DNA of 64,000 bases from the NCBI GenBank assembly GCA_037447605.1, contig CM074806.1, forward strand, positions 1,178,001-1,242,000. Reading direction: 5' to 3'. A program made the position numbers and the translations under genes. Origin of the DNA: Zygnema circumcarinatum SAG 698-1b. Lineage: Eukaryota; Plantae; Zygnematophyceae. Of the stretch, positions 8,102 through 61,048 are shown piece after piece. Numbering within the stretch: position 1 is the stretch's first letter; each line of letters begins with the position of its first letter. The notes beneath the pieces are model-generated. The model was given only the letters and a program-made list of their open reading frames with translations, did no database searches and was not told where the DNA came from.

Positions 8102-8175
8102 CGCTGATACGTGGGCTCGAACCACGGACCTTAAGGTTAACAGCCTTACGCTCTAGCCAACTGAGCTACACCAGC
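8102..8175 (-). tRNA. tRNA-Asn(GTT)
   Basis: Reverse complement folds to a full cloverleaf: GCTGGTG/TATCAGC acceptor, TAAGG-CTGTTAA-CCTTA anticodon arm, TTCGA T-loop. TATA and CAA lie upstream and TTTT downstream. Confidence 0.95.
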
Positions 8176-8459: not shown

Positions 8460-10133
8460 ATGATGGGCAGGACGAGCCCCATGGTGACCGGGTCGGAGTC
8501 GTCGTCAGGAAGGCTTGTGCTGGACGAGGTCCAGAACTTGAAGGAGACAGCGAACAAGTTTTTCAGTGAGGGGAAGTTTGAGCAAGCGATTATCGGTAAG
8601 CCATTCTTGCTCACTCTGCGGCTACATTGTTCCATTAGGTGAGTGAACGGAGCAGCGTTTCGTGCACTATGAATTCTGGGAGTTGAAAAGTACATCAAAA
8701 TGTCCTTGAGGAACGTGCGTCTAAAGCCGTTAAAATATTTCATGTTAACTTAGAACGTGCCTGACTGTGGTGATGTTATCCAGAGATCCGAGAGCCTCCA
8801 TCTGATACATTAAGGAACTTTCTATGCGCGATTTAAGTAGCAAAAAGAGAGGGTGAACCTGTGGCACTCAATCAAGGTCAATCTGTATTTGCGTCGTGAA
8901 AACTCTGGATTTTTTATTTACCTAGTGTAGCGCATAAGCGTCTATCTTAAGAAGAGTGCAGACGAGCATGCGAGGTTGTGGCTAGAAAAAATAATAGCAA
9001 TTTAGTCTTTCACGTTGAATGTCCATGAGGTTGTAAGCCAACGTGATGATTCTGTCGTAGATTTGAAAACCGTGGACGATTTCCTTATTCTTGTTTCAAT
9101 TGTCCTTGTTAAGTTAAGGACGTTAAGTTGTTTCTGGAATTTAACGGTTTGGCCCTTTCATTAAGACCATCTTCTTCTCCGATGTTGCACTTCGTCAACA
9201 CGTTTCCTGTCGCTCTGTAGGATCGACAAAAAGCAAATAATCAATTCGAATTTGAGCGTGTGATTTTAGCAAGCCCCTTAGATGTATCTATTTTTTACCT
9301 CCTCGCGGATTAAATTCAACCACAACCGTCTCCCTTCCCTGCTCTGACAGTTGGACTTGTAAATTTCCAATTCTGCAGGGTACAGTTTTGCAATTCAGCA
9401 GATCCAACAGGCTATAGTTCCTGCAAACCAACGAGAAGCAACTGTTAGTCCACAAAGAATTGCGTACCTTTTAAAGGCTGGTGGATCGAAGCTGGCGGAA
9501 GCTGCACTCCTTGCAGCCGTTTTGTTCAGCAACCGAGCACAAACGTATCTCAATCTGAAGAAGAACGCCAAGGTGAGTGCAGCTTTCCAGCATGTTGTGT
9601 TTCGAGTCACAGAACGATTACATAGCGCAACTTGAACTTTGAAGGACCGTACACACATATTGCTTCCTTGTTTTGATGTGTAGACAATGGTGTAGCACAC
9701 TCGTCACTTTGAAGAAAGTTTTGCTTATTTTCCAGTAAAAACTATTTCACGAGCATCTTCCTGGCTCATCTCAACTATGCTGCCAAAATTCGCTCTCTTA
9801 GATACGCAGTTATCCCTCCAAACGCTTCTGACTCTGACCTGTTTCGAATGCTCCTTGATGTGATTGAACTTGGAAGACCATGGGCTGGAAGCTGAGCTGA
9901 CTTCATTCCGTTAGTTATTGCAGGCTTTGGCAGACGCTGCAGCAGCTGCTGAGCTGGATCCAACGATGTTTAAGGCATGGTACCGGAAAGGTGTGGCTTG
10001 TTCCAACCTGGGAAAGCCTTACGATGCCATGGTTGCTCTGAGGGCGGCAGTGAAGCTGGACCCTTCCAGCCATGAAGCAAACTCCCTCTTGGCGGAGGTA
10101 CAATACAAAATGGGCAACCGAGACTCTATATAA
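8460..10133 (+). CDS. Small TPR-only protein (~180 aa), exons 8460-8595, 9379-9572, 9924-10133
   Basis: In-phase splicing gives LKETANKFF..SNRAQTYL..KAWYRKG, a co-chaperone-type TPR with carboxylate-clamp-like residues. Confidence 0.8.
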
Positions 10134-10883
10134 GCATGTGCAATAATATATTTTCTGCTGATTGATATCAATCACGATGTACAGAAAAAGGCGAAGAAGA
10201 CAGTGAGTGCAGTGCCTTAAGCTTTGTACCCGCAGCTCTTGGGAGGTGTCTGTGGCTGATAGACAGGTTGCTCACATCTTGGTGACTTATCCAAAGGTTC
10301 TGTTTCTTTCTGCTGGAACTAAACTTTAAAGGAGTAGACAGTGTCGCTTGTAGGGAATTCAGAGTAATATATATGAAGGATATAGTTAAACAGTTCAGTA
10401 AATATGAAATTACAGGAGTGACCATGGATTTCGGTTTGACATCTAATAAAATGGTCTGTGTTGGCATATTAAGTTGCAGTCGTTCGAAGTCACTGGAGCA
10501 GTTTCTCGATAAATTTTTCTCTACGGAGTAATCTGTAGCATATACATTATCATATTGCTCGCAACCACGTCAGTGGTGGGCCCATTAAAGCGCAAGCTCT
10601 GGTCAGACAATGATCCTAACGGCTGCCCTGGCAGAAGTGTCATGGGACTGTCTTGAGCTCCAGATAGGATCTTGACAAAACATGGGGAGATTTAGTGGGT
10701 TCTTAGGGTTGACGAGGCACTTCACCCGTACATCAACAATTGCCGAACTGTGGAGCTTCAAAAGCTAACTGATGCAGGGAGTGAAAAACAAAGTTAACTT
10801 CACAATAGCAAATCCAATTTTACATTTCGATAAGCACGCAAGCCAAAGCAATACAGGCTGAAGCAAATACAGCAAGTTCACGG
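8748..10883 (+). repeat. Copy 1 of a ~2 kb diverged direct repeat
   Basis: Colinear with 21976-23742 from ACTTAGAACGTGCC to ..GCTGAAGCAAATA, with many substitutions and indels. Confidence 0.92.
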
Positions 10884-11672
10884 TTCTCAGTGCAAGGAGT
10901 TGATTTGAAAACCGGTACATTGATTAGAGGAGAAAGGTCAATGCTGACGGCCGATAACAAGGATTAGCAAGGAAGAGAAATGAATCCATGCCAGAAATTC
11001 GCTAAAGCAAAGGCAGTCTAGCTAACCTGTAAGGCTCAAGCATCACATGCGTTGCGTAAATCTCCCATAACATCTCAGGCATAGATGCCTCATTGATCTT
11101 AGCTAAGTTGCCAAGAGCCCTTCACTTGCTGCTTTCTAGCCAGCCTGTTTCTGATCGAGCACTAATAACAAGCTTTAGTGACCTTGTAATGAACACAAAA
11201 TTATCTGCATTGCTTTCTAAACAGGTAGCCGTCCATCTCGACCTTGCTCATTCGCGTCTACTGTACGATACAACAACGCCTTAGCATTTAGCCTCCCCTG
11301 TTCCTTACAAGGTGGAAGAGCTGCGACTTGCATCCACCTCACTCAGCAGATGCGAGTGGAGTCGAAGGCTGCATGATGCTATTATCCCCCCAGTCCAGCC
11401 CCTCTAAATATCGCCTCTACTCTTTTCTTTAAAAATCCGAGCATAGTGGTGGTAATGAAAAAAGCTACCAGTGAGAATGACAAGCCCCTCAATGGGACCC
11501 TACTGCTGCGACATGGTATGTATGGCGCTTATGGAACCCTAACCCTAACCCTTCAACCTCATCTTCCTCATCCTCATCCTCTTCTTCCTCATCCGCTTCT
11601 TCATTCCTCATCCTTCTATTCCTTCTTCCTTTCCATCATCCTCTTCTACCACTCCCTTTGGTATTGCATTCG

Positions 11673-14600
11673 TCAAGTGCTTAATTTTAAGTCGCGAATT
11701 TCTTCCCTTACCTTATGTACCTCATCCTCATCCTCATCCTCCTCCATTGGCAATTCCTGCCCATTATTCTCATCCAGCGGGCCCAGCACGTGTACTCCTA
11801 CCGAACCCTTCTCCAAGATTGATTTCAAAAGCTTGATGGCGTCGGATGAAATATAATTTTCATTCAAATCCACAAGTTTGAAGGCTGGCAAGTATGCCAC
11901 TGCAGATGCCGCTGCGATGGCTCCAACTGTTGTGCATTTATTCTGACTTAGATGGAGCTCTTCCAATTTCCTGCACAAAGTCAATCGACACCGACCATTA
12001 ATAGCCTAACTCATAACATTTGACATAACAAATTGACGAAAGAAAAGTGCAACAAAAGTGCAGATACCCTCCTTTAAAGTATGTTTGAGGCACAAGACAA
12101 TACCTGTGTTGAGGACTTATGCTTAGGCACACAAAGGCAACTCCTTTGTCCCTCAATCTGTTCTCCCCAAGGTCGATCTTTCGCAAACCTTGATTGGTTT
12201 CTATCAGGGAACCCAAAGATTTAGTCGCCTTTTCAGTGATCTCATTGCCTCTAAGCTCCAAAACCTGAAACAACAATAGGATCAAACGCATGGCATTCAG
12301 ATTTAGCAATAGCCAGAGTCAGCATCGTAGGGACAAGGTTGAACTTGAGGCCATGTCTTAAGTCTATCATTACTAATATAGGTTATACATTTGGCATGGC
12401 AATTGAACTCACCTCGAGACTAACTACAGTGTTGTCTTTTTTAAGAGCCACCGCCAAAGCAATCGCGCCCTTGTCTCCAACACCTGAAGATCAATTCCGT
12501 TCAAAGCAATGACAAGAAATAAAATTAGAACATGTTTACAATTGAGAAAAACAAAAGCTGCCAGGGAATCAGCAATCCATGTGAAAGTTGGTCCTTCAAA
12601 TGAAAGCAACAATATAAAGAGGAAGCTGCAAACATTTCACAAAATACAAAAAAGCTGCAGATTGAGCTTCAATCTAACCTGTGTATGAGAGATAAAGTTC
12701 CCGCAAGCTGCTGTGACACTGCAGTGTCCTTGCAAGAGCTTGACCAATTTCTTCATTGAACATATTATCATATAAATCCAACGATTTCAAATTGCTACCT
12801 GCAACGGGAAACAAAGGAGGCATCAAGGAATGTGTTTCAAGGATGTCTCCTTCTCAACAAAAAACGCCATTCTTAGGCCAGGTGTATAACCGAACAACGT
12901 CATATTAAAAAAAAAGGTAGGTTTAAAAAATTTACCTGACATCAGAGCTTCTGCGAGGGCCAGACCACCCTCTGGCTTCAACCTTGTGGACGAAAATCGG
13001 AAATTTTCCAACTTCTTTGACTTTGCTACAATCTTTGCAAGCATCTTTGCGCCGTCATCTTCTGCAATTCATGCAATAGCAACAAATAAACCTCAGACTA
13101 ACCTTACAATATTCTTGGCAACCAAAAGCGTACACGATTTTAGTATCATCTATGTACACAAATCGCTAATGCACTGGAATTGGCCTGCCATATATTGCCC
13201 GACATAATCAAAGACCGATCAGACCAGCTTTCTTACTTTCGCACTACTGCATTCGTGTATAGTTCTTAACCAAGTGTGATGCAACAAATCAGGTCCTGAT
13301 TGAGCCATACCGCTGTACAAAAAAGAAGTTTTTGCGCTAGTCAAGTGACCATTGCATCATTTACTATAGGACAGCTTACCGATCAAGTCTTGGTGGAAGT
13401 GAAACAACCGAAGATCGGGCATGTCAGGCATTGTTTCAACTATAGCTATGGCAGCGTCCTTAGAGATGCCGGCATTACAAATTGACAATTGTTGAAGCGC
13501 TGTCTGCAAATCAGTACACAAACAAGAGCTTTAGCACCAAAACCAATAACAAAAAATTCAATCAAAAATTCATGACAAATTCTACTTTAGTCAGTCTTCA
13601 ACCACACAGCCCCACCACATGTGTACTGCACCTGTCCTTGCAAGGCATCCGCGCACGATCGTATGCCCTTTTCTCCCAAAGCATTGTCTGACAGGTTGAT
13701 TGCCAAAAGCTTAGTGCCCATTAGGGCCTTGCTTATGGTAGCCAAGGCAGCCAGTGCCTTGTTCTCCTGCCCATCCCCAAACATCACAAGTACAGATGTC
13801 ACCACAAGCCTCTCATCATCAAGAAACTCAGCATGCGTATGAAAACAACACTAGCATTCACAACGTGAGATGGCATTGAAAATGGCACCAGGAGGCCATA
13901 ATCAATTTCACCAAACTCGTGGGAGAAGAACAAACCTCTAGCCCGGCAATTGTGTCGCTTAAATCAACTTCTGTCAACGACGCTTTTACATTTTCAAATG
14001 CCTTTGCCGCCACAGCTGCAGCTTCCGGGCCGAAGATTTTCGAACTAAGGCAGACCTGCCTCACTCACACCCAGCACATACGAAGCGCTCCAAAGCATAA
14101 GCGCCTTATTCAAGCTTCCTAGCAAGTTAGAACATAATCTATCAAACCACGTGTAAGCATTCAAATAGCCAAAAGAAATGCATAGGACATCAGATATATA
14201 CCTTGGTGATAGACGAGGTAAAAAGCCGTTGCAAAAGCTCCTCTGCACGCTTCTCAGTCAGGAATTCACGTGCTCCACGGGACAGATCCACCTGCTTGCA
14301 TGCCGAAATCCCGTTGTAAGCGAGAGTTTGAGGAACAAAACCAGGAAAAGTTTTAGATTTCAGAATCAAAACGTTTTAATAACTAGTAGTTTCAGAGTTT
14401 TAAAACACTTTTAGAACAGTCGTATGACCGTTGAAATTGAATGACATTAAAATCCCCATGACAGCTTACAGCCCTATCATCCATTACACTTACCTCCAAT
14501 AGCAAGGGAGGAAAAACCTCATCTGTGTTACCAAAGAACCGGTTCACATGTTCCAGCTGCAACATAAAACAAAAATTGTAAAGATTTAAGGCAAAAAGAC

Positions 14601-17600
14601 ATCCCTTGAAAATGTGCTACTTTTTTTCTTTGACGATTTTAAGCAAAAAAACAAAAGAACAATTCCTAGCATGCAAGATAATCACCCCACTACCAAGATA
14701 GATATTAGGATGGAAATCAACACGCTTTTTACCTGCAATTTCAATACTTCTGAATCCTTGGGATAAAATTTGTAGAGTTTCATGACTCGAAACGACTCGC
14801 GCTCCGCCGCCGTCATTGAATCAATGAATTTGTTTCGCTCAATTTTAGCCTGCCATGTTGCAACAAAACTCACACTTCTTGTTAGCAAAATGTATGCAGT
14901 AAGAAACAAACATTCATATCAGCATCCATGTAAACTTTCATCCTTCTAAGCCTTTCCAGTTGAACTGCAACTTCTTACATAGAGCGAACAAAGGTCAAGC
15001 GTCTGGTAACAAGACTGGCGGCTAGCGAAGTGAATGCACAAAGGTTGTTATTCAGGATTTCTTTAGAGCTAAAAAGCATGCAAACATCTTACTGATGACT
15101 CTAGCAACTCTAAAGCTAGACAAAGGCAATCAGTTTATGTCTCAACTCACCTCCCTGATCTTGGCTTTCGCTGCATTCGCTTGATCTTTGCAGTGTGCCT
15201 GACCCATAAATTCAAAGCAACGCCAATACAACACATCCAATCAGGAACTTAAATGTGCCCAAAGATTCTAAAACTCACAAACCAAAAACAGTAACAGTGG
15301 GGAGTTCTAGCTGCAGCCTTAACAGCTTCTGATAGATAGTTCCTCCTTTCCGTTTCCACTGCCAGTCCCATCACTTAAAGCACTTGAAGTGCTTGAAAAC
15401 ACTGGTACAACGGCCAACGGTAAAAGCTTATAATGCAAAGGACTCACCTGTGGCTCGTCAGATATGTACGAGATTGGGACTACTGACTCTGCTGGGGGAT
15501 CCCCTTCTTTCTTTGGTTTGAAAAAATCTGTACAGGAACATCCAATAGATCAGTATCCAACCAGGCAGGCACCAACCAAAAGAACAGGTCGATCTGCGCA
15601 ATCTGATTCCAAGAATCAAGACAAAAAGCGCGCAAGAATCTACAAGTACGTCAAATAGGAAGAACCATAAAAAGGGGAAGTGAGTTAAACTCACATGGAA
15701 AGAAATATTCAATTTTTTTAGCATCCTCCCCTCTCTTCCGTTTCAAATATGTCCTGGTTGTCCTGCATAATGCACTTGGAAGTATGTGTTAGCAACTCAC
15801 TCGACAATACATGATTTAGGCGTGAAGCTGGAAAAAAACGGAGAAGCATCAAGACAAAAGCAACAATAGTTTCCGTATTACCTCCGTTGTTTGCACTTCA
15901 ATACAGAAACTTCAGAACGTTCTGCAGCTTTTCTCCTGCACAGCCGCACACCAAACAACAAAAGGCAAGAAATAGAGTTGAGAAACCAGCAATGTTTAAT
16001 CACATGAGCATACGACTGAACACGTACTGAGCGAGCGCAGAGAGCAAGTATTACTACCGCGCTGACTCGACGTCAAAATATGGCGACCAATCAATCTTCA
16101 TTGCCTCCATATCTATTATCTGTTCATCTTCCATTGCAACAGACTTCACCACGAGCTTGTTGGACGGGGCCAGTGGAGAAACCACCTGCCAGCCATAACA
16201 CAAGTCTTAATCAGATTAGTCCATGACCTTGACCACATTTACAATCGCATTTGTGAACAAAGGAAACAAAGCTCTAAGGGCTGAGGGATGAGGTATAGCA
16301 AGACAAAAGCCAGCAACTTACAGCAAAGATCACCGGGATCAAAAAAGCTTTCTCCAACACTTGCGAATATCCACCTGCATTTGACAGACAGATCAAATGT
16401 TCACTTATCGCTAAACTTCAATGCGGACTTACAAAAACAGAGCATGGTAATTTGTTACTGTTTTAAGTAGATGGACCTACAAGTGTAAAACGAACTTACG
16501 TTCAGTTGACCCGTACAGCCAGCAGGTCTTTTTGTGCAGGACCGCGCCAGGCTCGAATGCTTCCTGCAAAAGCATTTGAAGCATCTTGGTTAGTACATCA
16601 CCTCTGCTTTTTCATTCCTTGATCAATAAGGGCGCGCAAAGCATTTTCTGCCGCAATTTGCGCAGCAAAAGGCGTACTTTTTTTAGCCGCTTTAAATCCA
16701 GAAGCTCCAGCAGATGACCAAGATATGACTTGTCCTCTGACGTCCGTGATAGTAACAATTGTATTGTTGAAGCTAGCTTGCACATGGATCACTCCTTTAG
16801 AAGTTCTCCTTTTATTTTTGCGAATAAGAATTTTATTTGTTGGTCTAACCATGTTATTATAAGCAATTACAATTATATCAATATACGTGTGTTTTTCTCT
16901 GTGTGCATTTGTTTATTGCATATGTATTTACAAAGTGAGAACACAAAAAAAGTACTAAAATTTTTTCGAACACATAAGCAGAATATCTATCAATATAGAA
17001 TTACTCCAATAGTTTAATCTCATAAACACAGAAGAAAGATATTCGTGCATATAGTATGTGAAAGTTTTATTATATCTTGGTAAACAGCATTATCCTTGAC
17101 GCTGTTTGTGTTTAGGATNNNNNNNNNNGAGTTTCAGTGTTGTTTAAATTTGATGTAGAATGAAATGTGGGCTTGGATTCAAAAGTATTGTCAACTGTGA
17201 GCAAAGGTTTTAGCAAACTATTAAGATTCTGTGAAGCTTCACTGATTGCTTCTTGAGGGGTTAACGATCCGTTGGTCCATACTTCTAATACCAACATTTC
17301 TTGTCGTATGTCCCTTTCTCCTAAAGAGTGAATACTATAATTAATATTCCGAACGGGTTTTAAAGCAGCGTCAAGTACAAATATGCCATTGGTTATAGGT
17401 ATTTTTTTTTGCAAGGTACATGTTTTTGTATTTTCAATAGTAATATGAATTTCTATTGACGTCGATGTTTCTATATTAGCAATGTACTGCGTACTATCCA
17501 CTACTTTCACTGTTGGTGGTAACTGAATATCTTCGGCGGTAACGATTCCAGGACCATTAAACAATATTATTCCTTTTTGTGTCTCCAAAATATCACTTTT

Positions 17601-20165
17601 CAGTACTATATCTTTTAGGTTCAATAGTATATCATGTATGGATTCTCGAATTCCTTTTAATGTAGAATATTCATGTGTAGCACCAACTACATAAGCAGAA
17701 GTAATACAAGTACTATGTACCTCTCCTAATAATGCCCTACGAATAGCTGTTCCGATTGTTATAGCTTGGCCGATAGACAAAGGATACACAACAAAACGTC
17801 CATAATGTAGTCGTAAATTTTGTATCTCATGGTTCAAACATTTGCATTTTGGTTCATTTGAGATGCGATGTAGGTTCATGTGATGATGTTGATTGCCAAA
17901 GATAATTATACACGTCGTTTCTTGGGAGCTCTACAACCATTATGTGGCATTGGAGTTACGTCTCTAACAAAACTAAGTTGAATTCCACTATTTATAATAG
18001 CCCTAAGTGCTGTGTCTCTCCCCCTACCTGGACCGCTTAGCATCACCTCTGCTTGTTTCATTCCCTGATCAATAAGGGCGCGCAAAGCATTTTCTGCCGC
18101 AATTTGCGCAGCAAAAGGCGTACTTTTTTTAGCCGCTTTAAATCCAGAAGCTCCAGCAGATGACCAAGATATGACTTGTCCTCTGACGTCCGTGATAGTA
18201 ACAATTGTATTGTTGAAGCTAGCTTGCACATGGATCACTCCTTTAGAAGTTCTCCTTTTATTTTTGCGAATAAGAATTTTATTTGTTGGTCTAACCATGT
18301 TATTATAAGCAATTACAATTATATCAATATACGTGTGTTTTTCTCTGTGTGCATTTGTTTATTGCATATGTATTTACAAAGTGAGAACACAAAAAAAGTA
18401 CTAAAATTTTTTCGAACACATAAGCAGAATATCTATCAATATAGAATTACTCCAATAGTTTAATCTCATAAACACAGAAGAAAGATATTCGTGCATATAG
18501 TATGTGAAAGTTTTATTATATCTTGGTAAACAGCATTATCCTTGACGCTGTTTGTGTTTAGGATTAGTGCATACTACCATAACCTTTCCTCGTCTACGAA
18601 TCATTCTACAATTACTACATATTTTGCGTACTGAAGCTCTTACTTTCATTTGTTATTACCTCCAAATTTGAATTTTTTTCTGTCCGAATTTATCTACCTT
18701 AGAGAATTTTTCTTTATGCAATATTGTGAAATGACATCTTATGTCGNNNNNNNNNNGAGTTTCAGTGTTGTTTAAATTTGATGTAGAATGAAATGTGGGC
18801 TTGGATTCAAAAGTATTGTCAACTGTGAGCAAAGGTTTTAGCAAACTATTAAGATTCTGTGAAGCTTCACTGATTGCTTCTTGAGGGGTTAACGATCCGT
18901 TGGTCCATACTTCTAATACCAACATTTCTTGTCGTATGTCCCTTTCTCCTAAAGAGTGAATACTATAATTAATATTCCGAACGGGTTTTAAAGCAGCGTC
19001 AAGTACAAATATGCCATTGGTTATAGGTATTTTTTTTTGCAAGGTACATGTTTTTGTATTTTCAATAGTAATATGAATTTCTATTGACGTCGATGTTTCT
19101 ATATTAGCAATGTACTGCGTACTATCCACTACTTTCACTGTTGGTGGTAACTGAATATCTTCGGCGGTAACGATTCCAGGACCATTAAACAATATTATTC
19201 CTTTTTGTGTCTCCAAAATATCACTTTTCAGTACTATATCTTTTAGGTTCAATAGTATATCATGTATGGATTCTCGAATTCCTTTTAATGTAGAATATTC
19301 ATGTGTAGCACCAACTACATAAGCAGAAGTAATACAAGTACTATGTACCTCTCCTAATAATGCCCTACGAATAGCTGTTCCGATTGTTATAGCTTGGCCG
19401 ATAGACAAAGGATACACAACAAAACGTCCATAATGTAGTCGTAAATTTTGTATCTCATGGTTCAAACATTTGCATTTTGGTTCATTTGAGATGCGATGTA
19501 GGTTCATGTGATGATGTTGATTGCCAAAGATAATTATACACGTCGTTTCTTGGGAGCTCTACAACCATTATGTGGCATTGGAGTTACGTCTCTAACAAAA
19601 CTAAGTTGAATTCCACTATTTATAATAGCCCTAAGTGCTGTGTCTCTCCCCCTACCTGGACCGCTTAGCATCACCTCTGCTTTTTCATTCCTTGATCAAT
19701 AAGGGCGCGCAAAGCATTTTCTGCCGCAATTTGCGCAGCAGAATAGCTTAAAAGTGGATAAAAACAAAAGCGGCGAGCAAAACAGTACATTCAGCAATTC
19801 CACTACTACGTATCATCGCTGAGACGTACAAAAGAAAAGGTAGAGCGTCGAATATTTACCTTCAGGGAAGAAAAATCCCAGTTTTTTTCACGAACATCCA
19901 CGTGTTGAGCCATCTGTAAAAGAGCAAAAGGTCAGACTTTTGCAAAAATGCTTAAAACAATATGACTGAAAAAGTGATAGCGATTCTCACCTCAGTTCCA
20001 ACCAGAAGAACCTCCTTCCAAAGATTTTCCTACAGAAGTGAAGGGAGAAGTGTCAGGCATTTCTCCAATCTTCAATGACGATGCGTCAACACCAATAACG
20101 TTTTCCAAAAACTGCTTCACACGGAGTCTCAGGGCCTAATGTGAGGCAGACGCAATACTCACCAT
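11673..20165 (-). CDS. HIT4-domain / RanGAP-LRR fusion protein (~20 exons)
   Basis: HIT4-like exons: [13 protein letters not shown] (20029-19991), NWDFSSLK (19913-19860), EAFEPG..YGSTE (16563-16500), [17 protein letters not shown] (16185-16058), [21 protein letters not shown] (14849-14733), [12 protein letters not shown] (14556-14494). A phase-0 GT-AG intron then leads to RanGAP-like exons [11 protein letters not shown] (14291-14202), [36 protein letters not shown] and LGPLDEN plus an acidic tail. Confidence 0.8.
16598..16852 (-). pseudogene. rps11: Plastid rps11 5' fragment, frameshifted at the nuclear junction
   Basis: Identical to the first part of 17906-18298, then a 1-bp deletion and truncation. 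Confidence 0.85.
17129..17879 (-). CDS. rpoA: Plastid RNA polymerase alpha subunit, 5' part, cut by an N gap
   Basis: [37 protein letters not shown] motifs. Confidence 0.92.
17906..18298 (-). CDS. rps11: Plastid 30S ribosomal protein S11
   Basis: [35 protein letters not shown]; intact, 130 aa. Confidence 0.95.
18536..18649 (-). CDS. rpl36: Plastid 50S ribosomal protein L36 (below the ORF-track cutoff)
   Basis: Manual translation gives [37 protein letters not shown], with a GGAGG Shine-Dalgarno upstream. Confidence 0.95.
18757..19507 (-). CDS. rpoA: Second identical copy of the rpoA 5' part, cut by an N gap
   Basis: Same sequence and same gap-adjacent end as 17129-17879. Confidence 0.85.
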
Positions 20166-21050
20166 ATTTACATACTAAAAGTTTACCAGACTGACCCCGT
20201 ACTCCCTTCTATTCCCTCTGCTTCCTTGCCTCCACTCGCCCTTCACTTTTCCCTCTCTCAGTTGCTCAGTCTTTTCTTTCCCCTCTTCCAAAAAACAAGC
20301 AGAAAAAGTGCCCCCCCGCCTCTCCCTGGCCCCTTTTATAGGTCCCCCTCCCCCTTCCTGCACTGGCTCGCCCCTTTACTTCCAAGCCTCCTCCATACAG
20401 AGCCGAGCTCCAACGGCCTCCTTGGAAGGGAGGACCGTTCGGGGGCGAGCCAGTGCAGGACGAGTCGCCACGTAGACAGACGCAACAAAAACTCTGCCAC
20501 GCGGCAAAACAGTATCGATGCAGCGACCGACAACTCAGGAACTCGCTCCACGTGGAGGCTGCGAGGGAGCCACGTGGAAGCTGCTGAGAGGCGATTGGCG
20601 ACTAAAAATCAGGCGATTGGCGACTAAAAATCAGTTTTCGCGTAGGCACACGTGACAAAAGTTCACGACGAGACAAAACACTTTTACAACAGTTGAATAG
20701 TTCCAAAATCCGCGCCACGTGGAGGTTGTTGAGAGCCCGACTAGCAATTGAAAATCAAATTTTGGTGGGTCAAGATTGAAAATGTCTAAACGATACCGAA
20801 ACAAACGGCAAACAAAATTTTTTTATTTAGGCCGAAGCGACCAATCACAGCGCGACATGGCGAGTTTCTGAAACGTCAAGTCCAGCCGCATAACAAGCCG
20901 TCGGGTTCCATGCAATCCCATGCAACCCAGCTCGCAACCACGCTTTACAGTGCAACCATGGACTTTCCAACCAAAAAATAACGTCATCAGACCCATCCTG
21001 CATGCACGCATGCACCAAGAAGGGCAAGATCAACGACAGGTGGCATGATT

Positions 21051-21121
21051 TGAGTGGAGGGATTCGAACCCTCAGCATTCGGTTAACAAAACCGCTGCTC
21101 TCCCAGTTGAGCTGCACTCAT
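21051..21121 (-). ncRNA. tRNA-like element (pseudo-tRNA or SINE head; nominal anticodon TGT/Thr)
   Basis: TGAGTG/CACTCA stem, GCTC-AACTGGGA-GAGC D arm, CGGT/ACCG stem with TTTGTTA loop, GAGGG-TTCGAAT-CCCTC T arm. Mismatches at 1:72 and at the top of the anticodon stem. Confidence 0.65.
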
Positions 21122-21975: not shown

Positions 21976-23742
21976 ACTTAGAACGTGCCTGACTGTGTTG
22001 ATGTTATCCTGGATTTTTCAGTGTAGCGCATAAGCGTCTTTCTTAAGAAGAGTGCAGACGAGCATCCGAAGTTTTGGCTAGAAAAAAAAAAAATTAGTCG
22101 TTCACGTTGACCGTCCATGAAGTTGTAAGCCAACTTGATGATTCTGTCGTAGATTTGAAAACCGTGGAGGATTTCCTTGTTCTTGTTTCAATTGTCCTTG
22201 CTAAGTTAAGGACGTTAAGTTGTGTCTGGAATTTAACGGTTTGGCCCTTTCATTAAGACCATCTTCTTCTCCAATGTTGCACTTCGTCAACAGGTTTCCT
22301 GTCGCTCTGTAGGATCGACAAAAAGCAAATAATCATTCGAATTAGAGTGTGATTTTAGCAAGCCCCTTGGATATATCTATTTTTGACCTAGTTTCACCTC
22401 GCGGATTAAATTCAACCACAACCGTCTCCCTTCCCTGCTCTGACAGTTGGACTTGTAAATTTCCAATTCTGCAGGGTACAGTTTTGCAATTCAGCAGATC
22501 CAACAGGCTGTAGTTCCTGCAAACCAACGAGAAGCAACTGTTAGTCCACAAAGAATTGCTTATTTTCCAGTAAAAACTATTTCACGAGCATCTTCCTGGC
22601 TCATCTCAACTATGCTGCCAAAATTCGCTCTCTTAGATACGCAGTTATCCCCCCAAACGCTTCTGACTCTGACCTGTTCCGAATGCTCCTTGATGTGATT
22701 GAACTTGGAAGACCATGGGCTGGAAGCTGAGCTGACTTCATTCCATTAGTTATTGCAGGCTTTGGCAGACGCTGCAGCAGCTGCTGAGCTGGATCCAACG
22801 ATGTTTAAGGCATGGTACCGGAAAGGTGTGGCTTGTTCCAACCTGGGAAAGCCTTACGATGCCATGGTTGCCATGAGGGCGGCAGTGAAGCTGGACCCTT
22901 CCAGCCATGAAGCAAACTCCCTCCTGGCGGAGGTACAATACAAAATGGGCAACCGAGCCTAAATATAAGCAGGTGCAATAATATGTATTCTGCTGATTGA
23001 TATCAAACACGATGTACAGAAAAAGGCGAAGACGACAGTGAGTGCAGTTTCTCAAGCTCTGTACCAGCAGCTTTTGGGAGGTGCCTTCGGCTGATAGGCA
23101 GGTTGCTGCCATCTTGGTGACTTATCCAAAGGTTCTACTTCCAGCATGCTGCTGGTGAAGTTTCTTCTGCTGGAACTAAACTTTAATGGAAGTAGACAGT
23201 GTCGCTAGAAGGGAATTCAGAGTAATGTAGTTGAAAGAAATAAATTATATAGTTAAGTAAATATGAGATTTCAGGAGTACGGATTTCGGTTTGACATCAA
23301 TAAGATACTTTTTGTTGGTTTAATAAGTTGCACTCGTTCGAAGTTATTGGAGGTGTCTCTTGATAACTTTTTCTACATTCAGTAATCTATAACGAATACA
23401 TTATTATATTACTCGCAACCTGGTCATTTGGTGGGCTCATTGAAGCGCAGGTTCTGGTCATAAAATGATCCTCTTGACGACTACCATGGCAGAAATATCA
23501 TGGTTTTGTTTTGAGCTCTAGATAAAATCTTGACAAAAAATAGGGAGATTTAGAGGGTCTTACGGTTAACGAAACACTTCACCCATACATCAACAATTAA
23601 CACACCGTGGGGCTCCAAACGCTAATTGACGCAAGGGAGTGGAGAACAAAATCAATTTAATAATAGCAAATCCAGTTTTACATTTCGATAAGAGCGCAAG
23701 CCAAAGCTATACAGGCTGAAGCAAATAAAGCAAATTTACAGG
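21976..23742 (+). pseudogene. Copy 2 of the direct repeat: truncated TPR gene fragment
   Basis: Lacks exon 1 and has a ~260-bp deletion (TTGC microhomology) removing the 3' half and donor of exon 2. Exon 3 is retained at about 22759-22962. Confidence 0.85.
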
Positions 23743-57000: not shown

Positions 57001-57451
57001 ACTTGAAGACATTGCAAAGTTGAGAGAGGCGGAACTTGTAGAGTTGGAGAAGTTGAGGAAGGAGAGGCAAACTATGGCTGCCATTGATAAGGTAAGAGCG
57101 GATGTGAGAAGCATGTGGGAAAGGGAGTCGAAGACACCAAAAGTAGATGTGAGGCATGGAGAGAACGTAAAAGCATCGTCATCAATGAAAGAGGGTCAAG
57201 TGACTGCGAGTGGATTGACGACACCGGATCTGCAGAGCCTACGACATGGACTGGATAGGCAGTTGCAAGAGCTCCGGTCAACCCTACATTTGGGGAAAGA
57301 GGACATGCAGAGGGCTGAGGAATTGGCGGATACAGGTTTTGCGATCATTGAGAAGTCGTCAGAGGTTGGGAAGAAACGGGGAAGAGAGGATAAGGACGAC
57401 TACTCGCGAAAAATTGCCAGGGGGGTGGGGGGAAGAGTCGGGGATTGGTGA
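54055..57451 (+). CDS. Long coiled-coil protein (~680 aa, 10 exons), divergent NMCP/CRWN-like
   Basis: Exons 54055-54258, 54361-54570, 54688-54920, 55056-55149, 55266-55442, 55591-55674, 55781-55912, 56243-56350, 56545-56726 and 56830-57451 splice in frame with GT-AG. The rod start resembles NMCP. Confidence 0.7.
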
Positions 57452-58845
57452 AGTTATTGAAATGGCGGCGTGGAGCAGCGGTGCATGCTTCCGTAAGCTC
57501 CCTATGGTACGGCTTGGTTTTGTTGTAAGCCCCTTAAGGTTGGAGGACCTTGCTTTTTTCGTGGTGGATTCGACACAGCAATGGGCGTGGGTATGGGCAT
57601 CGCGACCGCGAGGCCATGGAAGGCGCGTGGCCGACATCTGCAGCAACACCAGCAACGTGGGCGGTGCTAGAAGGAACGAAGCATGAAGTCGAAGTTGGAG
57701 ATGTGTCTGGCAATGGATCGTTAATCTTGGACAAACCTGAATCTTGGATTGGCACTCTTTCGTGAAGTGCCCATCCAAGAACAGAGTTCTTTGTCGAGTT
57801 AGTCAAGTGCTCCCGTAGGACAGGTAGAGTTTCCTGATTATTTGAGATAGGTAAAGGTGGAGGGGGCCGTCTATGCGACCGTATGCTCAAGGGCAGGAAT
57901 GCGGATGTCATTCGCCTGTGAGCTGTTCAATAGAGTTTGTGCAATCAAAGTTGTGAATATGTTGTTATGTAAATACATTTGGTTCCTTCGGAACATCTGT
58001 CGTTTGTTCTTTGTTGTATTTTCAAGACTGGAAGGCCCTCTTTCATTGGATGGATAAATCGGCAAGGCAATGTACAATATGGCGTCTCAAACTTGCAAAA
58101 TGGCTTTCGGGTGGACTTGGTTGTCACGCTCCAATGAACCTGAACTGGTACTGGGGAAACGTTCAATGCTTGTCTTGTGGAACAACTCTAAGGCGCCCAA
58201 GGGGGGTACTGCATCAGTGTGTTTTACCATTTGAGTGAAGTGACAAAGCTCTGTGCTTACTGAATGAGTTTCAACAGCATTGCCCCAGTAAGTTGCAACC
58301 TTAAATAGCGAGCTTCTTTGAAAATCATTGTCAAGTCCTTCGCCACATGCGGTATGCCCCTGCGACGTCTGCCGTCGTCAGCAACAGGGCCATGCGAATA
58401 AAGTCAAGTTTTCCGTGCCAAGCCTTCGCTCCCATGCCGACGAAGACCCGCTCCGCCGCCATCCACCGCTCCGCCGCCATCCACCGCTCCGCCGCCACAT
58501 GCCATCCCATACCATGCCATACCATGCCATGCCATGGTGACGCCAGCGTGCGCACATCGCCAGGTCAACGCGATTCGTGCCACGTAGGCAGGCTCGCGTG
58601 GCAAGGAAGTTCGACCACGTGGCGGCGGATATGAATATCACCACGCAGGCACGATACGCGCTGAATATCGCGCCGGAGTGCGGCGGGCGCTCGAAATTGG
58701 AGCCTGTTGTTGTTTGGCCGCGGAACTGGAAATGGATGCCGCATGGCCGCATGGCCGCATGGCCTCATGGCCGCATGGCCTCATGGCCGCATGGCCGCAT
58801 GGCCGCATGGCCGCATGGCCGCATGGCCGCATGGCNNNNNNNNNN

Positions 58846-59190
58846 AGAAGCATGTGGGAAAGGGAGTCGAAGACACCAAAAGTAGATGTGAGGCATGGAG
58901 AGAACGTAAAAGCATCGTCATCAATGAAAGAGGGTCAAGTGACTGCGAGTGGATTGACGACACCGGATCTGCAGAGCCTACGACATGGACTGGATAGGCA
59001 GTTGCAAGAGCTCCGGTCAACCCTACATTTGGGGAAAGAGGACATGCAGAGGGCTGAGGAATTGGCGGATACAGGTTTTGCGATCATTGAGAAGTCGTCA
59101 GAGGTTGGGAAGAAACGGGGAAGAGAGGATAAGGACGACTACTCGCGAAAAATTGCCAGGGGGGTGGGGGGAAGAGTCGGGGATTGGTGA
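58846..59190 (+). CDS. 3' end of the second copy of the coiled-coil gene (remainder in the gap)
   Basis: Matches 57107-57451. Confidence 0.6.
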   Translation, partial: RSMWERESKTPKVDVRHGENVKASSSMKEGQVTASGLTTPDLQSLRHGLDRQLQELRSTLHLGKEDMQRAEELADTGFAIIEKSSEVGKKRGREDKDDYSRKIARGVGGRVGDW

Positions 59191-61048
59191 AGTTATTGAA
59201 ATGGCGGCGTGGAGCAGCGGTGCATGCTTCCGTAAGCTCCCTATGGTACGGCTTGGTTTTGTTGTAAGCCCCTTAAGGTTGGAGGACCTTGCTTTTTTCG
59301 TGGTGGATTCGACACAGCAATGGGCGTGGGTATGGGCATCGCGACCGCGAGGCCATGGAAGGCGCGTGGCCGACATCTGCAGCAACACCAGCAACGTGGG
59401 CGGTGCTAGAAGGAACGAAGCATGAAGTCGAAGTTGGAGATGTGTCTGGCAATGGATCGTTAATCTTGGACAAACCTGAATCTTGGATTGGCACTCTTTC
59501 GTGAAGTGCCCATCCAAGAACAGAGTTCTTTGTCGAGTTAGTCAAGTGCTCCCGTAGGACAGGTAGAGTTTCCTGATTATTTGAGATAGGTAAAGGTGGA
59601 GGGGGGCGTCTATGCGACCGTATGCTCAAGGGCAGGAATGCGGATGTCATTCGCCTGTGAGCTGTTCAATAGAGTTTGTGCAATCAAAGTTGTGAATATG
59701 TTGTTATGTAAATACATTTGGTTCCTTTGGAACATCTGTCGTTTGTTCTTTGTTGTATTTTCAAGACTGGAAGGCCCTCTTTCATTGGATGGATAAATCG
59801 GCAAGGCAATGTACACTATGGCGTCTCAAACTTGCAAAATGGCTTTCGGGTGGACTTGGTTGTCACGCTCCAATGAACCTGAACTGGTACTGGGGAAACG
59901 TTCAATGCTTGTTTTGGGGAACAACTCTAAGGCGCCCAAGGGCGATACTGCATCAGTGTGCTTTACCACTTTTCGCAAGCTAGGAGCTCATCTCCATTCG
60001 GGAGGAAGTGGAGCTGCGGTAACGAGCAGCAGGTCACGGGAATAGAGCTCTGTGCATGTTCGCATTTGAGAATGATGCGGCATTGAACTCTCCCTGCGGT
60101 GCCATCAAGTGACAAAATCATCGTTAGGAATCACGAGAAACTGGTCCCAAAGGACCTAAGGACAAAAGACAAATTTGAGTGGCAAATTGCCTCGTGGCAA
60201 TGCATCGTGGATTTGGCAGTTGCCTGTCTGTGTGTACCCTCTGCTGTGTTTCTGTCTCTAATTGTCATCCTCGAGCTGCATTGCTGGAGGACATGGCCCT
60301 GCGCCATCTCCCGAACGCAAGGCCAATGGGCCCCCGGGGGGGGCTCACTGCACCTTAAGGAATGCGACCGAAGCGAGCAGCCGTCGAGGGCGAGGGCGCC
60401 GCTAAGGTGGGTTTGGCGTCAAAGCGCGCCGCGGTACCTTTATGAGTTTTTAGCAACGTGCGGAAATAGGGCGAGGGACTGCCTCGTCCACTGCAATTTG
60501 CCACTTCGAAAGTCGAGTACAGCCGGTTCTCCAGCCCATTCATTTCCCACGAGCCATAACAAGCCATTGTCTTTTACCTTTGAGACCCAGCTTCAGTTTT
60601 TTAGGCTGTAGAAAAGGGAAGAGCCTTGTTGGAAGCCCAGATACAGCAAGGCATCCCCTAGTAGCTGCTTCTCCACTATTTCCCACGAGGACATCTTCAC
60701 ACTCACTACAACAAAGGGTTTACGCCAGATGTGCTCATTAGCATTTTCCGCAACAGCTCATCCGCCTCTTACTCATTACAATGAAAACTTGTACACGTCA
60801 CTTTTCCATTCACACCAGAGCCATACTTGTCCAGTGTGTGCCCCTTGCGCCTACCGGTAAGGGCACACATACGGCGCCCTTCTAATGAGCATGTACAATA
60901 CATCAGCTTCCGTCAACAGCTGCTAACAACCATAAACTCAGTTCCACCCTATGCAGAGGACGATAAAAGAAAGGAAGGAAATACAGGTTCACTGAACAGT
61001 GTCCACTTCGTTTTTGTTCCACCGAGACAACTGGACATCTCCATCCCT

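What the first reader, a model, noticed from the sequence alone, without database searches (positions are those of the whole stretch)
11673..20165. HIT4-RanGAP chimeric gene: a chromocentre-protein domain replaces the WPP targeting domain
Seen: about 11 exons translate to the conserved HIT4 domain. Where HIT4 normally ends (..NRYYGKAHEVL-like; here [12 protein letters not shown]), the frame continues PPLLLE into a GTAAGT donor. A 202-bp phase-0 intron (14292-14493) then joins [11 protein letters not shown], the start of a plant-type RanGAP LRR domain that ends in LGPLDEN plus an acidic tail. The RanGAP half has no in-frame ATG and little room for a promoter of its own, and the modelled exons have no stops. 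Known: land-plant RanGAPs use an N-terminal WPP domain to dock on the outer nuclear envelope, and Arabidopsis HIT4 is a chromocentre protein needed for heat-induced decondensation. Inference: exon shuffling made a RanGAP-like protein targeted to nuclear heterochromatin. I know of no described protein with this architecture. The ORF track hides it because the exons are tiny and the plastid block interrupts them.
Basis: partly seen in the sequence, partly recalled or inferred. Interest (0 to 1): 0.92.

Follow-up and report, generated by a model that had tools for sequence, protein, structure and literature searches.

The report
Expressed HIT4–RanGAP fusion gene in alga
A filamentous green alga (genus Zygnema) transcribes and splices one gene that joins a worn copy of a plant chromatin protein (HIT4) to a worn copy of the enzyme that switches off the nuclear-transport GTPase Ran; the join is real and was found nowhere else, but both halves have lost key conserved residues and one other sample carries a broken copy, so its job is unproven.

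Summary
The fusion is real. A 21-exon, 671-codon model has no internal stop. RNA-like runs from two studies splice the 202-bp fusion intron at the depth of the HIT4 introns. One 1,240-nt contig runs from HIT4 exon 6 into RanGAP exon 18, and DNA contigs cross the junction unbroken. The gaps lie inside intron 3, in a plastid block that is probably a 75-bp NUPT inflated by the assembler; RNA joins exon 3 to 4 across it.

The reading 'active RanGAP sent to heterochromatin' is weak. The RanGAP half lost 25 of 122 near-invariant residues, including the Arg91-equivalent and the NNM loop. The HIT4 half lost 61 of 125, including a ~37-residue segment. Another sample carries a frameshifted allele.

Best reading: a lineage-specific, dispensable chimera encoding a HIT4-like domain plus a GAP-impaired, perhaps still Ran-binding LRR, with a frame that looks kept by selection. 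No homologous fusion was found. The scan noted no such fusion on other DNA, but a DEK-HIT4 fusion and many other chimeras in this genome.

The parts
20334..20341 (-). TATA-like box upstream of exon 1 (putative promoter)
   Evidence: sequence; RNA loose end of 209 nt beyond exon 4 in X9 implies about 110 nt of 5' UTR if exons 1-3 are as modelled; start site not mapped
20548..20722 (.). three palindromic CCACGTGG G-boxes upstream
   Evidence: at 20548, 20570, 20715; motif enriched window-wide (18 matches vs 2.2 expected); function untested
20163..20165 (-). exon 1 coding part: ATG alone, followed by GTGAGT donor; in-frame stop four codons upstream
   Evidence: Closterium HIT4 models also begin with a 4-residue first exon before the same intron
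19991..20029 (-). exon 2 (HIT4, 39 nt)
   Evidence: same length as Closterium HIT4 exon
19860..19913 (-). exon 3 (HIT4, 54 nt)
   Evidence: RNA loose end from exon 4 matches it; same length in Closterium
16596..19743 (-). plastid rps11-rpoA-rpl36 block inside intron 3 with two N gaps; probably a 75-bp NUPT (16596-16670 = 19669-19743) inflated by assembly, true intron about 223 nt
   Evidence: same variant 75-mer (1 substitution, 1 deletion vs plastid) at both ends; single-copy DNA contig 16341-16649, then depth 9,000-36,000
16058..16563 (-). exons 4-6 (HIT4): 16563-16500, 16374-16322, 16185-16058
   Evidence: joint 4-5 and 6-7 in RNA; exon 4 same length in Closterium; exon 6 finds HIT4 proteins
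15448..15935 (-). exons 7-9 (HIT4): 15935-15882, 15762-15695, 15527-15448; exon 8 carries KRKR (aa 139-142), a candidate NLS absent from 119 homologues
15151..15198 (-). exon 10 (HIT4), short: the ~37-aa conserved beta-strand/helix segment normally preceding it is missing
   Evidence: RNA joints 15197/15447 and 14848/15150; alignment; no remnant detected in introns 9-10
14733..14849 (-). exon 11 (HIT4); site of a 4-bp frameshifting deletion at 14823 in sample X6 (stop at aa 208)
14494..14556 (-). exon 12: HIT4 C-terminal motif, lost stop, six extra codons and the fusion donor
14292..14493 (-). fusion intron, 202 bp, phase 0, GT..AG
   Evidence: skipped in X7 (depth 118.7) and X9 (124.9); bin depth about 10 equals exon 12's share alone (9.3); DNA contigs 14154-14973 unbroken in X3 and X6
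13936..14291 (-). exons 13-14 (RanGAP LRR start): 14291-14202, 14055-13936; exon 14 holds Arg-to-Leu326
13380..13766 (-). exons 15-16: 13766-13632, 13503-13380; exon 16 holds NNM-to-QDL (aa 410-412)
12104..13061 (-). exons 17-20 (RanGAP LRR): 13061-12936, 12798-12679, 12483-12413, 12264-12104
11673..11970 (-). exon 21: last LRRs, LGPLDEN motif, shortened acidic tail, stop
   Evidence: RNA contigs extend into the 3' UTR
11545..11640 (-). GA-rich stretch after the stop that reads as an out-of-frame D/E-rich run, probably the remnant of a longer acidic tail
   Evidence: inference
8924..10881 (+). left copy of a direct repeat (3' part of an intact TPR gene) bracketing the cassette
22020..23739 (+). 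right copy of the TPR-gene repeat, 87-93% identical to the left

Best explanation
A lineage-specific chimeric gene of Zygnema, made by DNA-level (intron-keeping) duplication of a HIT4 gene and of the LRR part of an algal RanGAP gene. Shown: HIT4's stop is gone, six extra codons lead to a donor, and one mRNA encodes a 671-aa protein with HIT4-like N-half, no WPP, and RanGAP LRR plus short acidic tail. Inferred: the protein is made; without WPP it is not docked on the outer nuclear envelope, and a new KRKR motif may bring it into the nucleus. Inferred: the LRR keeps the acidic residues that contact Ran but has lost the conserved Arg and the NNM loop, so it most likely acts as a weak or dead GAP, i.e. 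a Ran-binding or protein-scaffolding LRR on a degenerate HIT4 domain. Inferred: selection kept the frame open while invariant residues changed, but the gene is dispensable, at least in culture, since one sample carries a null allele.
For: Intact 21-exon frame. Fusion splice in two studies at full depth, no read-through into intron 12, one contig over exons 6-18 whose length fits the model exactly (903 + 250 nt + 84). Exons 2-4 equal Closterium HIT4 exons in length, so DNA-level copy. Equivalents of human D86, D121, D245, E304 kept; R91 and the 189-191 loop changed (contact residues from bioRxiv 10.64898/2026.04.28.721414 and 10.1101/2024.10.04.616749). Neutral decay to this level of loss leaves no stop in 2.5% of simulations and all 8 RanGAP-half introns' splice bases intact in about 3%, before counting indels. 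Frameshift in all of X6's depth.
Against: No protein-level, localisation or activity data. The canonical Zygnema RanGAP could not be retrieved, so some substitutions could be lineage-wide or older than the fusion; close paralogous segments exist elsewhere in the genome (loose ends). The intact-frame argument shows selection while the residues changed, not necessarily after the fusion. Residue mapping rests on about 25% identity alignments to human RanGAP1. That loss of the Arg impairs GAP activity is from my own recollection of mutagenesis papers I could not open, and 2 of 120 plant RanGAPs plus some moss paralogues also lack it.
Confidence: 0.55

Rival explanations
1. A transcribed, correctly spliced but functionless chimera of two already diverged paralogues: the divergence and the selection happened in parent copies before the fusion, and the fusion is now drifting towards a pseudogene.
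For: Frameshifted allele plus 3 amino-acid and 2 silent changes in X6; half of HIT4's invariant residues and a folded segment lost; close paralogues share the diverged HIT4 sequence; this genome has many young expressed chimeras (unchecked notes).
Against: Twenty introns and 671 codons intact; flanking repeats already 7-13% diverged and a paralogue of the fusion intron only about 70% alike in part, which suggests the locus is not brand new; the fused splice is the dominant form.
Confidence: 0.25
2. One reading: an active RanGAP re-targeted by HIT4 to nuclear heterochromatin, lowering Ran-GTP locally.
For: Fusion real, WPP absent; full LRR length, acidic contacts and LGPLDEN tail kept; candidate NLS; HIT4 is chromocentre-localised in Arabidopsis (PMC4408840, PMC10970331).
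Against: 25 of 122 near-invariant RanGAP residues lost against a median of 1 and a maximum of 9 in 120 others; 61 of 125 for HIT4 against at most 17. The angiosperm basic N-terminal extension (median 62 aa, 16 K/R) is absent.
Confidence: 0.12
3. A selfish or formerly selfish element like Drosophila Sd: a nuclear RanGAP derivative that disturbs nuclear transport and biases which meiotic nucleus survives in the zygospore, present in one strain and broken in another.
For: Sd is a duplicated, mislocalised RanGAP (PMC7263674). Fast change in a normally conserved protein and an intact/null polymorphism between samples. From my own knowledge, only one of four meiotic nuclei survives in Zygnema zygospores. 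X6 may be UTEX 1559, reported as a non-functional mating type (+) (PMC11096116); this identity is only inferred from run codes, years and strain relationships.
Against: Sd needs an enzymatically active GAP (PMC7263674), and this one looks impaired. The RNA runs are probably from vegetative cultures. No segregation data, no link to a mating locus.
Confidence: 0.05
4. Two separate neighbouring genes, or an assembly chimera.
For: The assembly has artefacts nearby (plastid block, gaps); RanGAP-half contigs are deeper than HIT4-half contigs in X7 (185-308 vs 139), so some RanGAP-only RNA cannot be excluded.
Against: DNA contigs of two samples cross the junction at single-copy depth; the fusion splice is seen in two studies; intron 12 has no RNA cover; no Met before aa 343 in the RanGAP half; a 3'-ward depth gradient is usual for poly(A) libraries.
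Confidence: 0.03

Closest known systems
Land-plant WPP-RanGAP (RanGAP1/2; e.g. Physcomitrium P0179, Ginkgo P0147)
   Same: LRR domain over about 385 aa at 42-47% identity, [11 protein letters not shown] and LGPLDEN motifs, acidic tail
   Different: No WPP; HIT4 in its place; Arg of the AGR motif and NNM loop changed; 8 introns in the LRR where land plants have none; long branch (1.17 vs median 0.22)
HEAT INTOLERANT 4 (HIT4), Arabidopsis and Closterium
   Same: Homologous over the whole conserved domain (38-40% identity), same exon lengths for exons 2-4 as Closterium
   Different: Stop lost and fused; 61 of 125 invariant residues changed; ~37-aa segment deleted; Closterium HIT4 stands alone, ends in the normal motif, no RanGAP within 10 kb
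Drosophila Segregation distorter (Sd-RanGAP)
   Same: Duplicated RanGAP lacking its normal localisation part; polymorphic in the species (PMC7263674)
   Different: Sd is a truncation, enzymatically active and a proven driver; this is a fusion, probably impaired, with no drive data
Young chimeric genes in general (jingwei/Sdic type; from my own knowledge) and others noted in this genome
   Same: Parts of two genes joined in frame by duplication, expressed, fast-evolving
   Different: DNA-based with 20 introns; this pair of partners is not described (no paper holds both HIT4 and RanGAP)

Membership tests
plant RanGAP | RanGAP-type LRR domain | tested here: met
   E 5e-106, 42-47% identity to named RanGAPs; scores 625 bits on a RanGAP profile that includes its own exons
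plant RanGAP | N-terminal WPP domain | tested here: not met
   no WPP hit in the window; at most a 4-residue echo of WPP's last helix before the donor
plant RanGAP | acidic C-terminal tail after LGPLDEN-type motif | tested here: met
   37 aa with 14 D/E vs median 42 aa with 20
plant RanGAP | conserved Arg (human R91 equivalent) and NNM loop (human 189-191 equivalent) | tested here: not met
   Leu326 vs R in 118/120; QDL vs NNM in 120/120
plant RanGAP | acidic Ran-contact residues (human D86, D121, D245, E304 equivalents) | tested here: met
   D321, D354, D466, E527; mapping approximate
plant RanGAP | stimulates GTP hydrolysis by Ran | not testable with these tools
   needs an assay
HIT4 | homology over the conserved HIT4 domain and shared gene structure | tested here: met
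HIT4 | family-invariant residues and the EFDW beta-strand/helix segment | tested here: not met
   61/125 lost; segment deleted, confirmed by RNA joints
HIT4 | free C-terminus ending in the NRYYGKAH motif | tested here: not met
   motif altered at 4 invariant positions and extended into RanGAP
HIT4 | chromocentre localisation and role in heat-induced decondensation | not testable with these tools
   needs imaging and mutants
Sd-type meiotic driver | enzymatically active RanGAP mislocalised to the nucleus | tested here: inconclusive
   candidate NLS present, conserved GAP residues changed
Sd-type meiotic driver | biased transmission | not testable with these tools
   needs crosses
chimeric (fusion) gene | parts of two genes in one spliced in-frame transcript | tested here: met
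chimeric (fusion) gene | parent genes kept elsewhere in the genome | tested here: inconclusive
   an expressed HIT4 paralogue is seen in X9 and other HIT4 loci are noted; a canonical RanGAP was not retrieved, though viability of X6 implies one

The most novel reading that the evidence does not exclude
The fusion protein is a functional nuclear or chromatin-bound Ran-binding decoy (or residual GAP) that alters the Ran gradient in the nucleus, and the intact/null difference between strains reflects a role in mating or in which meiotic nucleus survives: an Sd-like RanGAP innovation in the algal sister group of land plants.
Probability: 0.1. Interest if true: 0.88.

Novelty: new variant of a known kind. 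Interest (0 to 1): 0.52.

Why it matters
RanGAP defines nuclear transport direction by being kept outside the nucleus, and re-localised RanGAP copies are known to cause meiotic drive in flies. A naturally WPP-less, HIT4-led RanGAP derivative in a sequenced alga, with an intact allele and a natural null allele, is a ready-made test of what a nuclear or catalytically impaired RanGAP does in the plant lineage. If it is only a decaying chimera, it is one more example of this genome's frequent gene fusions. A side result may help HIT4 itself: its predicted fold has a sub-domain resembling WNK CCT-like / SNF5 repeat domains, exactly the part this copy has lost.

Tried and rejected
Joined step left out:, the spliced 671-aa protein was never sent to a search, family-scan or folding tool. 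It was assembled only inside scripts from window.fa, for local comparison with fetched proteins. Remote searches used single exons by reference or alignments with exons as separate rows, so no whole-fusion HMM search or structure model exists.

Searches for other fusions were negative. Exon 6 against 1.84 billion representatives found nothing above 59% identity. The HIT4 profile listed only 255-474-aa proteins without LRR; this is weak, because the model would score 148 bits, below the listing cut of 171. The RanGAP profile did not list the fusion although it would score 625 bits against a cut of 605. Exon 21 alone found nothing. No HIT4 lies beside RanGAP in 55 metagenome loci. Coverage of zygnematophytes in these collections is thin, so absence in relatives is not shown.

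Also without result: no zygnematophyte RanGAP could be fetched; alignment A2 piled exons on one repeat and was discarded; Pfam has no HIT4 model; no remnant of the lost HIT4 segment was found in introns 9-10; two mutagenesis papers were not held.

Rejected: misassembly at the junction; a real 3-kb plastid insertion (less likely, not excluded without long reads); retroposition (introns kept); shuffling at the moss linker intron (different phase and place).
Full report
Observation. On the minus strand the window holds a 21-exon model from ATG 20165 to stop 11673. Every intron is GT..AG and the 2,016-nt frame gives 671 aa with no internal stop. Residues 1-251 (12 exons) are HIT4: a single exon retrieves HIT4-like proteins, the model matches them at up to E 8e-38, and a profile search returns proteins named HEAT INTOLERANT 4 from Closterium to angiosperms. 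Residues 258-671 (9 exons) are a plant-type RanGAP LRR with acidic tail: 42-47% identity and E down to 5e-106 to named RAN GTPase-activating proteins. No WPP sequence is present in the window. The first in-frame Met of the RanGAP half is aa 343.

Organism. The plastid rps11 in the window clusters with Zygnema circumcarinatum rps11. The holding DNA runs contain about 70-80 Mb, and the scan lists 1,177 windows for this genome. This fits the 67-71 Mb Z. circumcarinatum genomes of PMC11096116. Genus is well supported; strain is not determined.

The gaps and the plastid block. Both N runs lie in a 3.1-kb rps11-rpoA-rpl36 block within intron 3. The block begins and ends with the same 75-bp rps11 piece, which carries one substitution and one deletion relative to the internal plastid copies. 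In two DNA runs a single-copy contig runs from nuclear intron sequence into this piece and stops at 16649, after which depth jumps to 9,000-36,000. The simplest reading is one 75-bp NUPT in a 223-nt intron, through which the assembler walked into plastid sequence. Unchecked notes describe the same pattern elsewhere in this assembly. Either way it is intronic: RNA contigs of X7 and X9 continue from exon 4 into exon 3.

The fusion is transcribed. Runs X7 and X9 (two studies; type not on record, but they hold only about 38% of the words and skip introns) show a 202-nt skip with CT..AC ends at the predicted junction. Its depth is 118.7 and 124.9, against 138.9 and 124.9 for the HIT4 introns. In X9 one 1,240-nt contig runs from exon 6 to exon 18, and its internal coordinates equal the summed exon lengths. 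RNA depth over intron 12 is what exon 12's 14 bases alone predict, so there is no sign of a HIT4-only transcript ending there. DNA contigs of X3 and X6 cross 14154-14973 unbroken at single-copy depth. Contigs cannot prove full-length molecules, and RanGAP-half depth is higher in X7, so minor RanGAP-only RNA is not excluded.

Both halves are worn. Of 122 columns at least 95% conserved in 120 plant RanGAPs, the fusion changes 25 (others: median 1, maximum 9). Of 125 such columns in 119 HIT4 proteins it changes 61 (others: median 1, maximum 17, Closterium 10-17). Aligned through moss RanGAP to human RanGAP1, the changes include the Arg91-equivalent (Leu326; Arg in 118/120) and the NNM loop (QDL, 410-412; invariant in 120/120). 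That loop lies at human Arg189-Arg191, the residue proposed as an arginine finger in bioRxiv 10.64898/2026.04.28.721414. The acidic residues that contact Ran in that paper (D86, D121, D245, E304) have their equivalents kept. That losing the Arg91-equivalent cripples GAP activity is my recollection; the papers were not held. A fold model of a canonical plant LRR is a ribonuclease-inhibitor-type horseshoe matching RanGAP1 and Rna1p.

In the HIT4 half about 37 residues are deleted, confirmed by the RNA joints. In a model of canonical HIT4 (pLDDT 81) they form a beta-strand and helix of a sub-domain whose best structural matches are WNK CCT-like and SNF5-repeat domains (Z 5.3-6.8; Pfam CCTL2_WNK E 0.0035). 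This is a lead only. The long basic N-terminal extension of angiosperm HIT4 is absent, but Closterium models lack it too. A KRKR motif not seen in 119 homologues has appeared at aa 139-142.

Selection. Mutating a canonical RanGAP coding sequence neutrally until 20% of invariant residues change takes 0.11 substitutions per site. It leaves no stop in 2.5% of runs, and all splice bases of 8 introns survive with probability about 0.03, before indels are counted. So the frame was protected while these residues changed; whether that was before or after the fusion cannot be told without the parents. Against essentiality, sample X6 carries at full depth a 4-bp deletion in exon 11 that stops the protein at aa 208, plus three amino-acid and two silent changes. 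X6 may be UTEX 1559, the more distant strain reported as a non-functional mating type (+) (PMC11096116), but that is inference from coded runs.

Origin. Exons 2-4 have the same lengths (39, 54, 64 nt) as in the Closterium HIT4 gene, which stands alone and ends normally. The RanGAP half has 8 introns where land plants have none. Both halves therefore come from DNA-level copies. The cassette sits between 87-93% identical copies of the 3' part of a TPR gene. Loose ends show an expressed HIT4 paralogue, a second copy of the intron-12 region, and short stretches shared with other loci through the RanGAP half. The six linker codons are either exonised HIT4 3' UTR or a remnant of WPP's last helix (LMLE/LLLE in 69 of 99 RanGAPs); unresolved. 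The moss linker intron is phase 1 and elsewhere, so reuse of an ancestral intron is not shown. In a tree the RanGAP half lies outside land plants on a long branch, with no zygnematophyte for comparison.

Distribution and novelty. No other HIT4-RanGAP protein was found and no paper names both. These collections cover zygnematophytes thinly. The scan has not noted this fusion on other DNA; it has unchecked notes of a DEK-HIT4 fusion, further HIT4 loci, a RanGAP-derived hairpin and many other chimeric genes in this genome.

Mechanism and verdict. Shown: one spliced mRNA with an open frame joining HIT4 to a WPP-less RanGAP LRR. Inferred: the protein is made, may enter the nucleus, and binds Ran or other partners with little or no GAP activity; it is dispensable in at least one strain (0.55). 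Rivals: expressed but decaying chimera (0.25), active RanGAP on heterochromatin (0.12), Sd-like driver (0.05), artefact or separate genes (0.03). It works like, at most, a mis-targeted pseudo-RanGAP; it fails membership of both parent families on defining residues. It is a real new domain combination of a known kind, lineage-specific chimeric gene, and interesting mainly because of what RanGAP mislocalisation can do. Interest 0.52.

Noticed in passing
P0027 residues 216-286 (model m489b75f20288, residues 167-237): Canonical HIT4 has a predicted beta-beta-alpha-alpha sub-domain resembling WNK CCT-like and SNF5/BAF47 repeat domains (Z 5.3-6.8; weak Pfam CCTL2_WNK hit). The rest of HIT4 has no clear solved match. 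Possible clue to how HIT4 acts on chromatin.
   Followed up: partly
window 16596-19743: Plastid block bounded by the same variant 75-mer with two gaps: probable assembler inflation of a tiny NUPT in intron 3.
   Followed up: yes
window 14823 (run X6): 4-bp frameshifting deletion fixed in another sample; the new stop overlaps an in-frame ATG (aa 209) that would lead into the RanGAP half, though re-initiation there is unlikely.
   Followed up: partly
window 16370 and 14387 (loose ends): An expressed HIT4 paralogue shares exon 5 but differs in exon 4 (24/30 alike); a second genomic copy of the intron-12 region diverges to about 70% below 14387.
   Followed up: partly
window 16186-16283: An X7 contig runs from exon 6 into intron 5, so intron 5 may be partly retained or alternatively spliced.
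   Followed up: no
window 8924-10881 and 22020-23739: Direct repeats of a TPR gene's 3' part (87-93%) bracket the cassette; tRNA-Asn at 8102-8175 and tRNA-Thr at 21049-21121 lie near its ends.
   Followed up: partly
window 20356-20460 and 20548-20722: Perfect 19-bp inverted repeat and three CCACGTGG G-boxes just upstream of the TATA box: possibly a borrowed, stress- or light-responsive promoter.
   Followed up: no
window 57107-59971: 1.1-kb 99% duplicate beside the third N gap (58836-58845), probably another assembly overlap.
   Followed up: no
L002, L016, L030, L054: Some moss-type RanGAP paralogues have Gln in place of the otherwise conserved Arg of the AGR motif.
   Followed up: no
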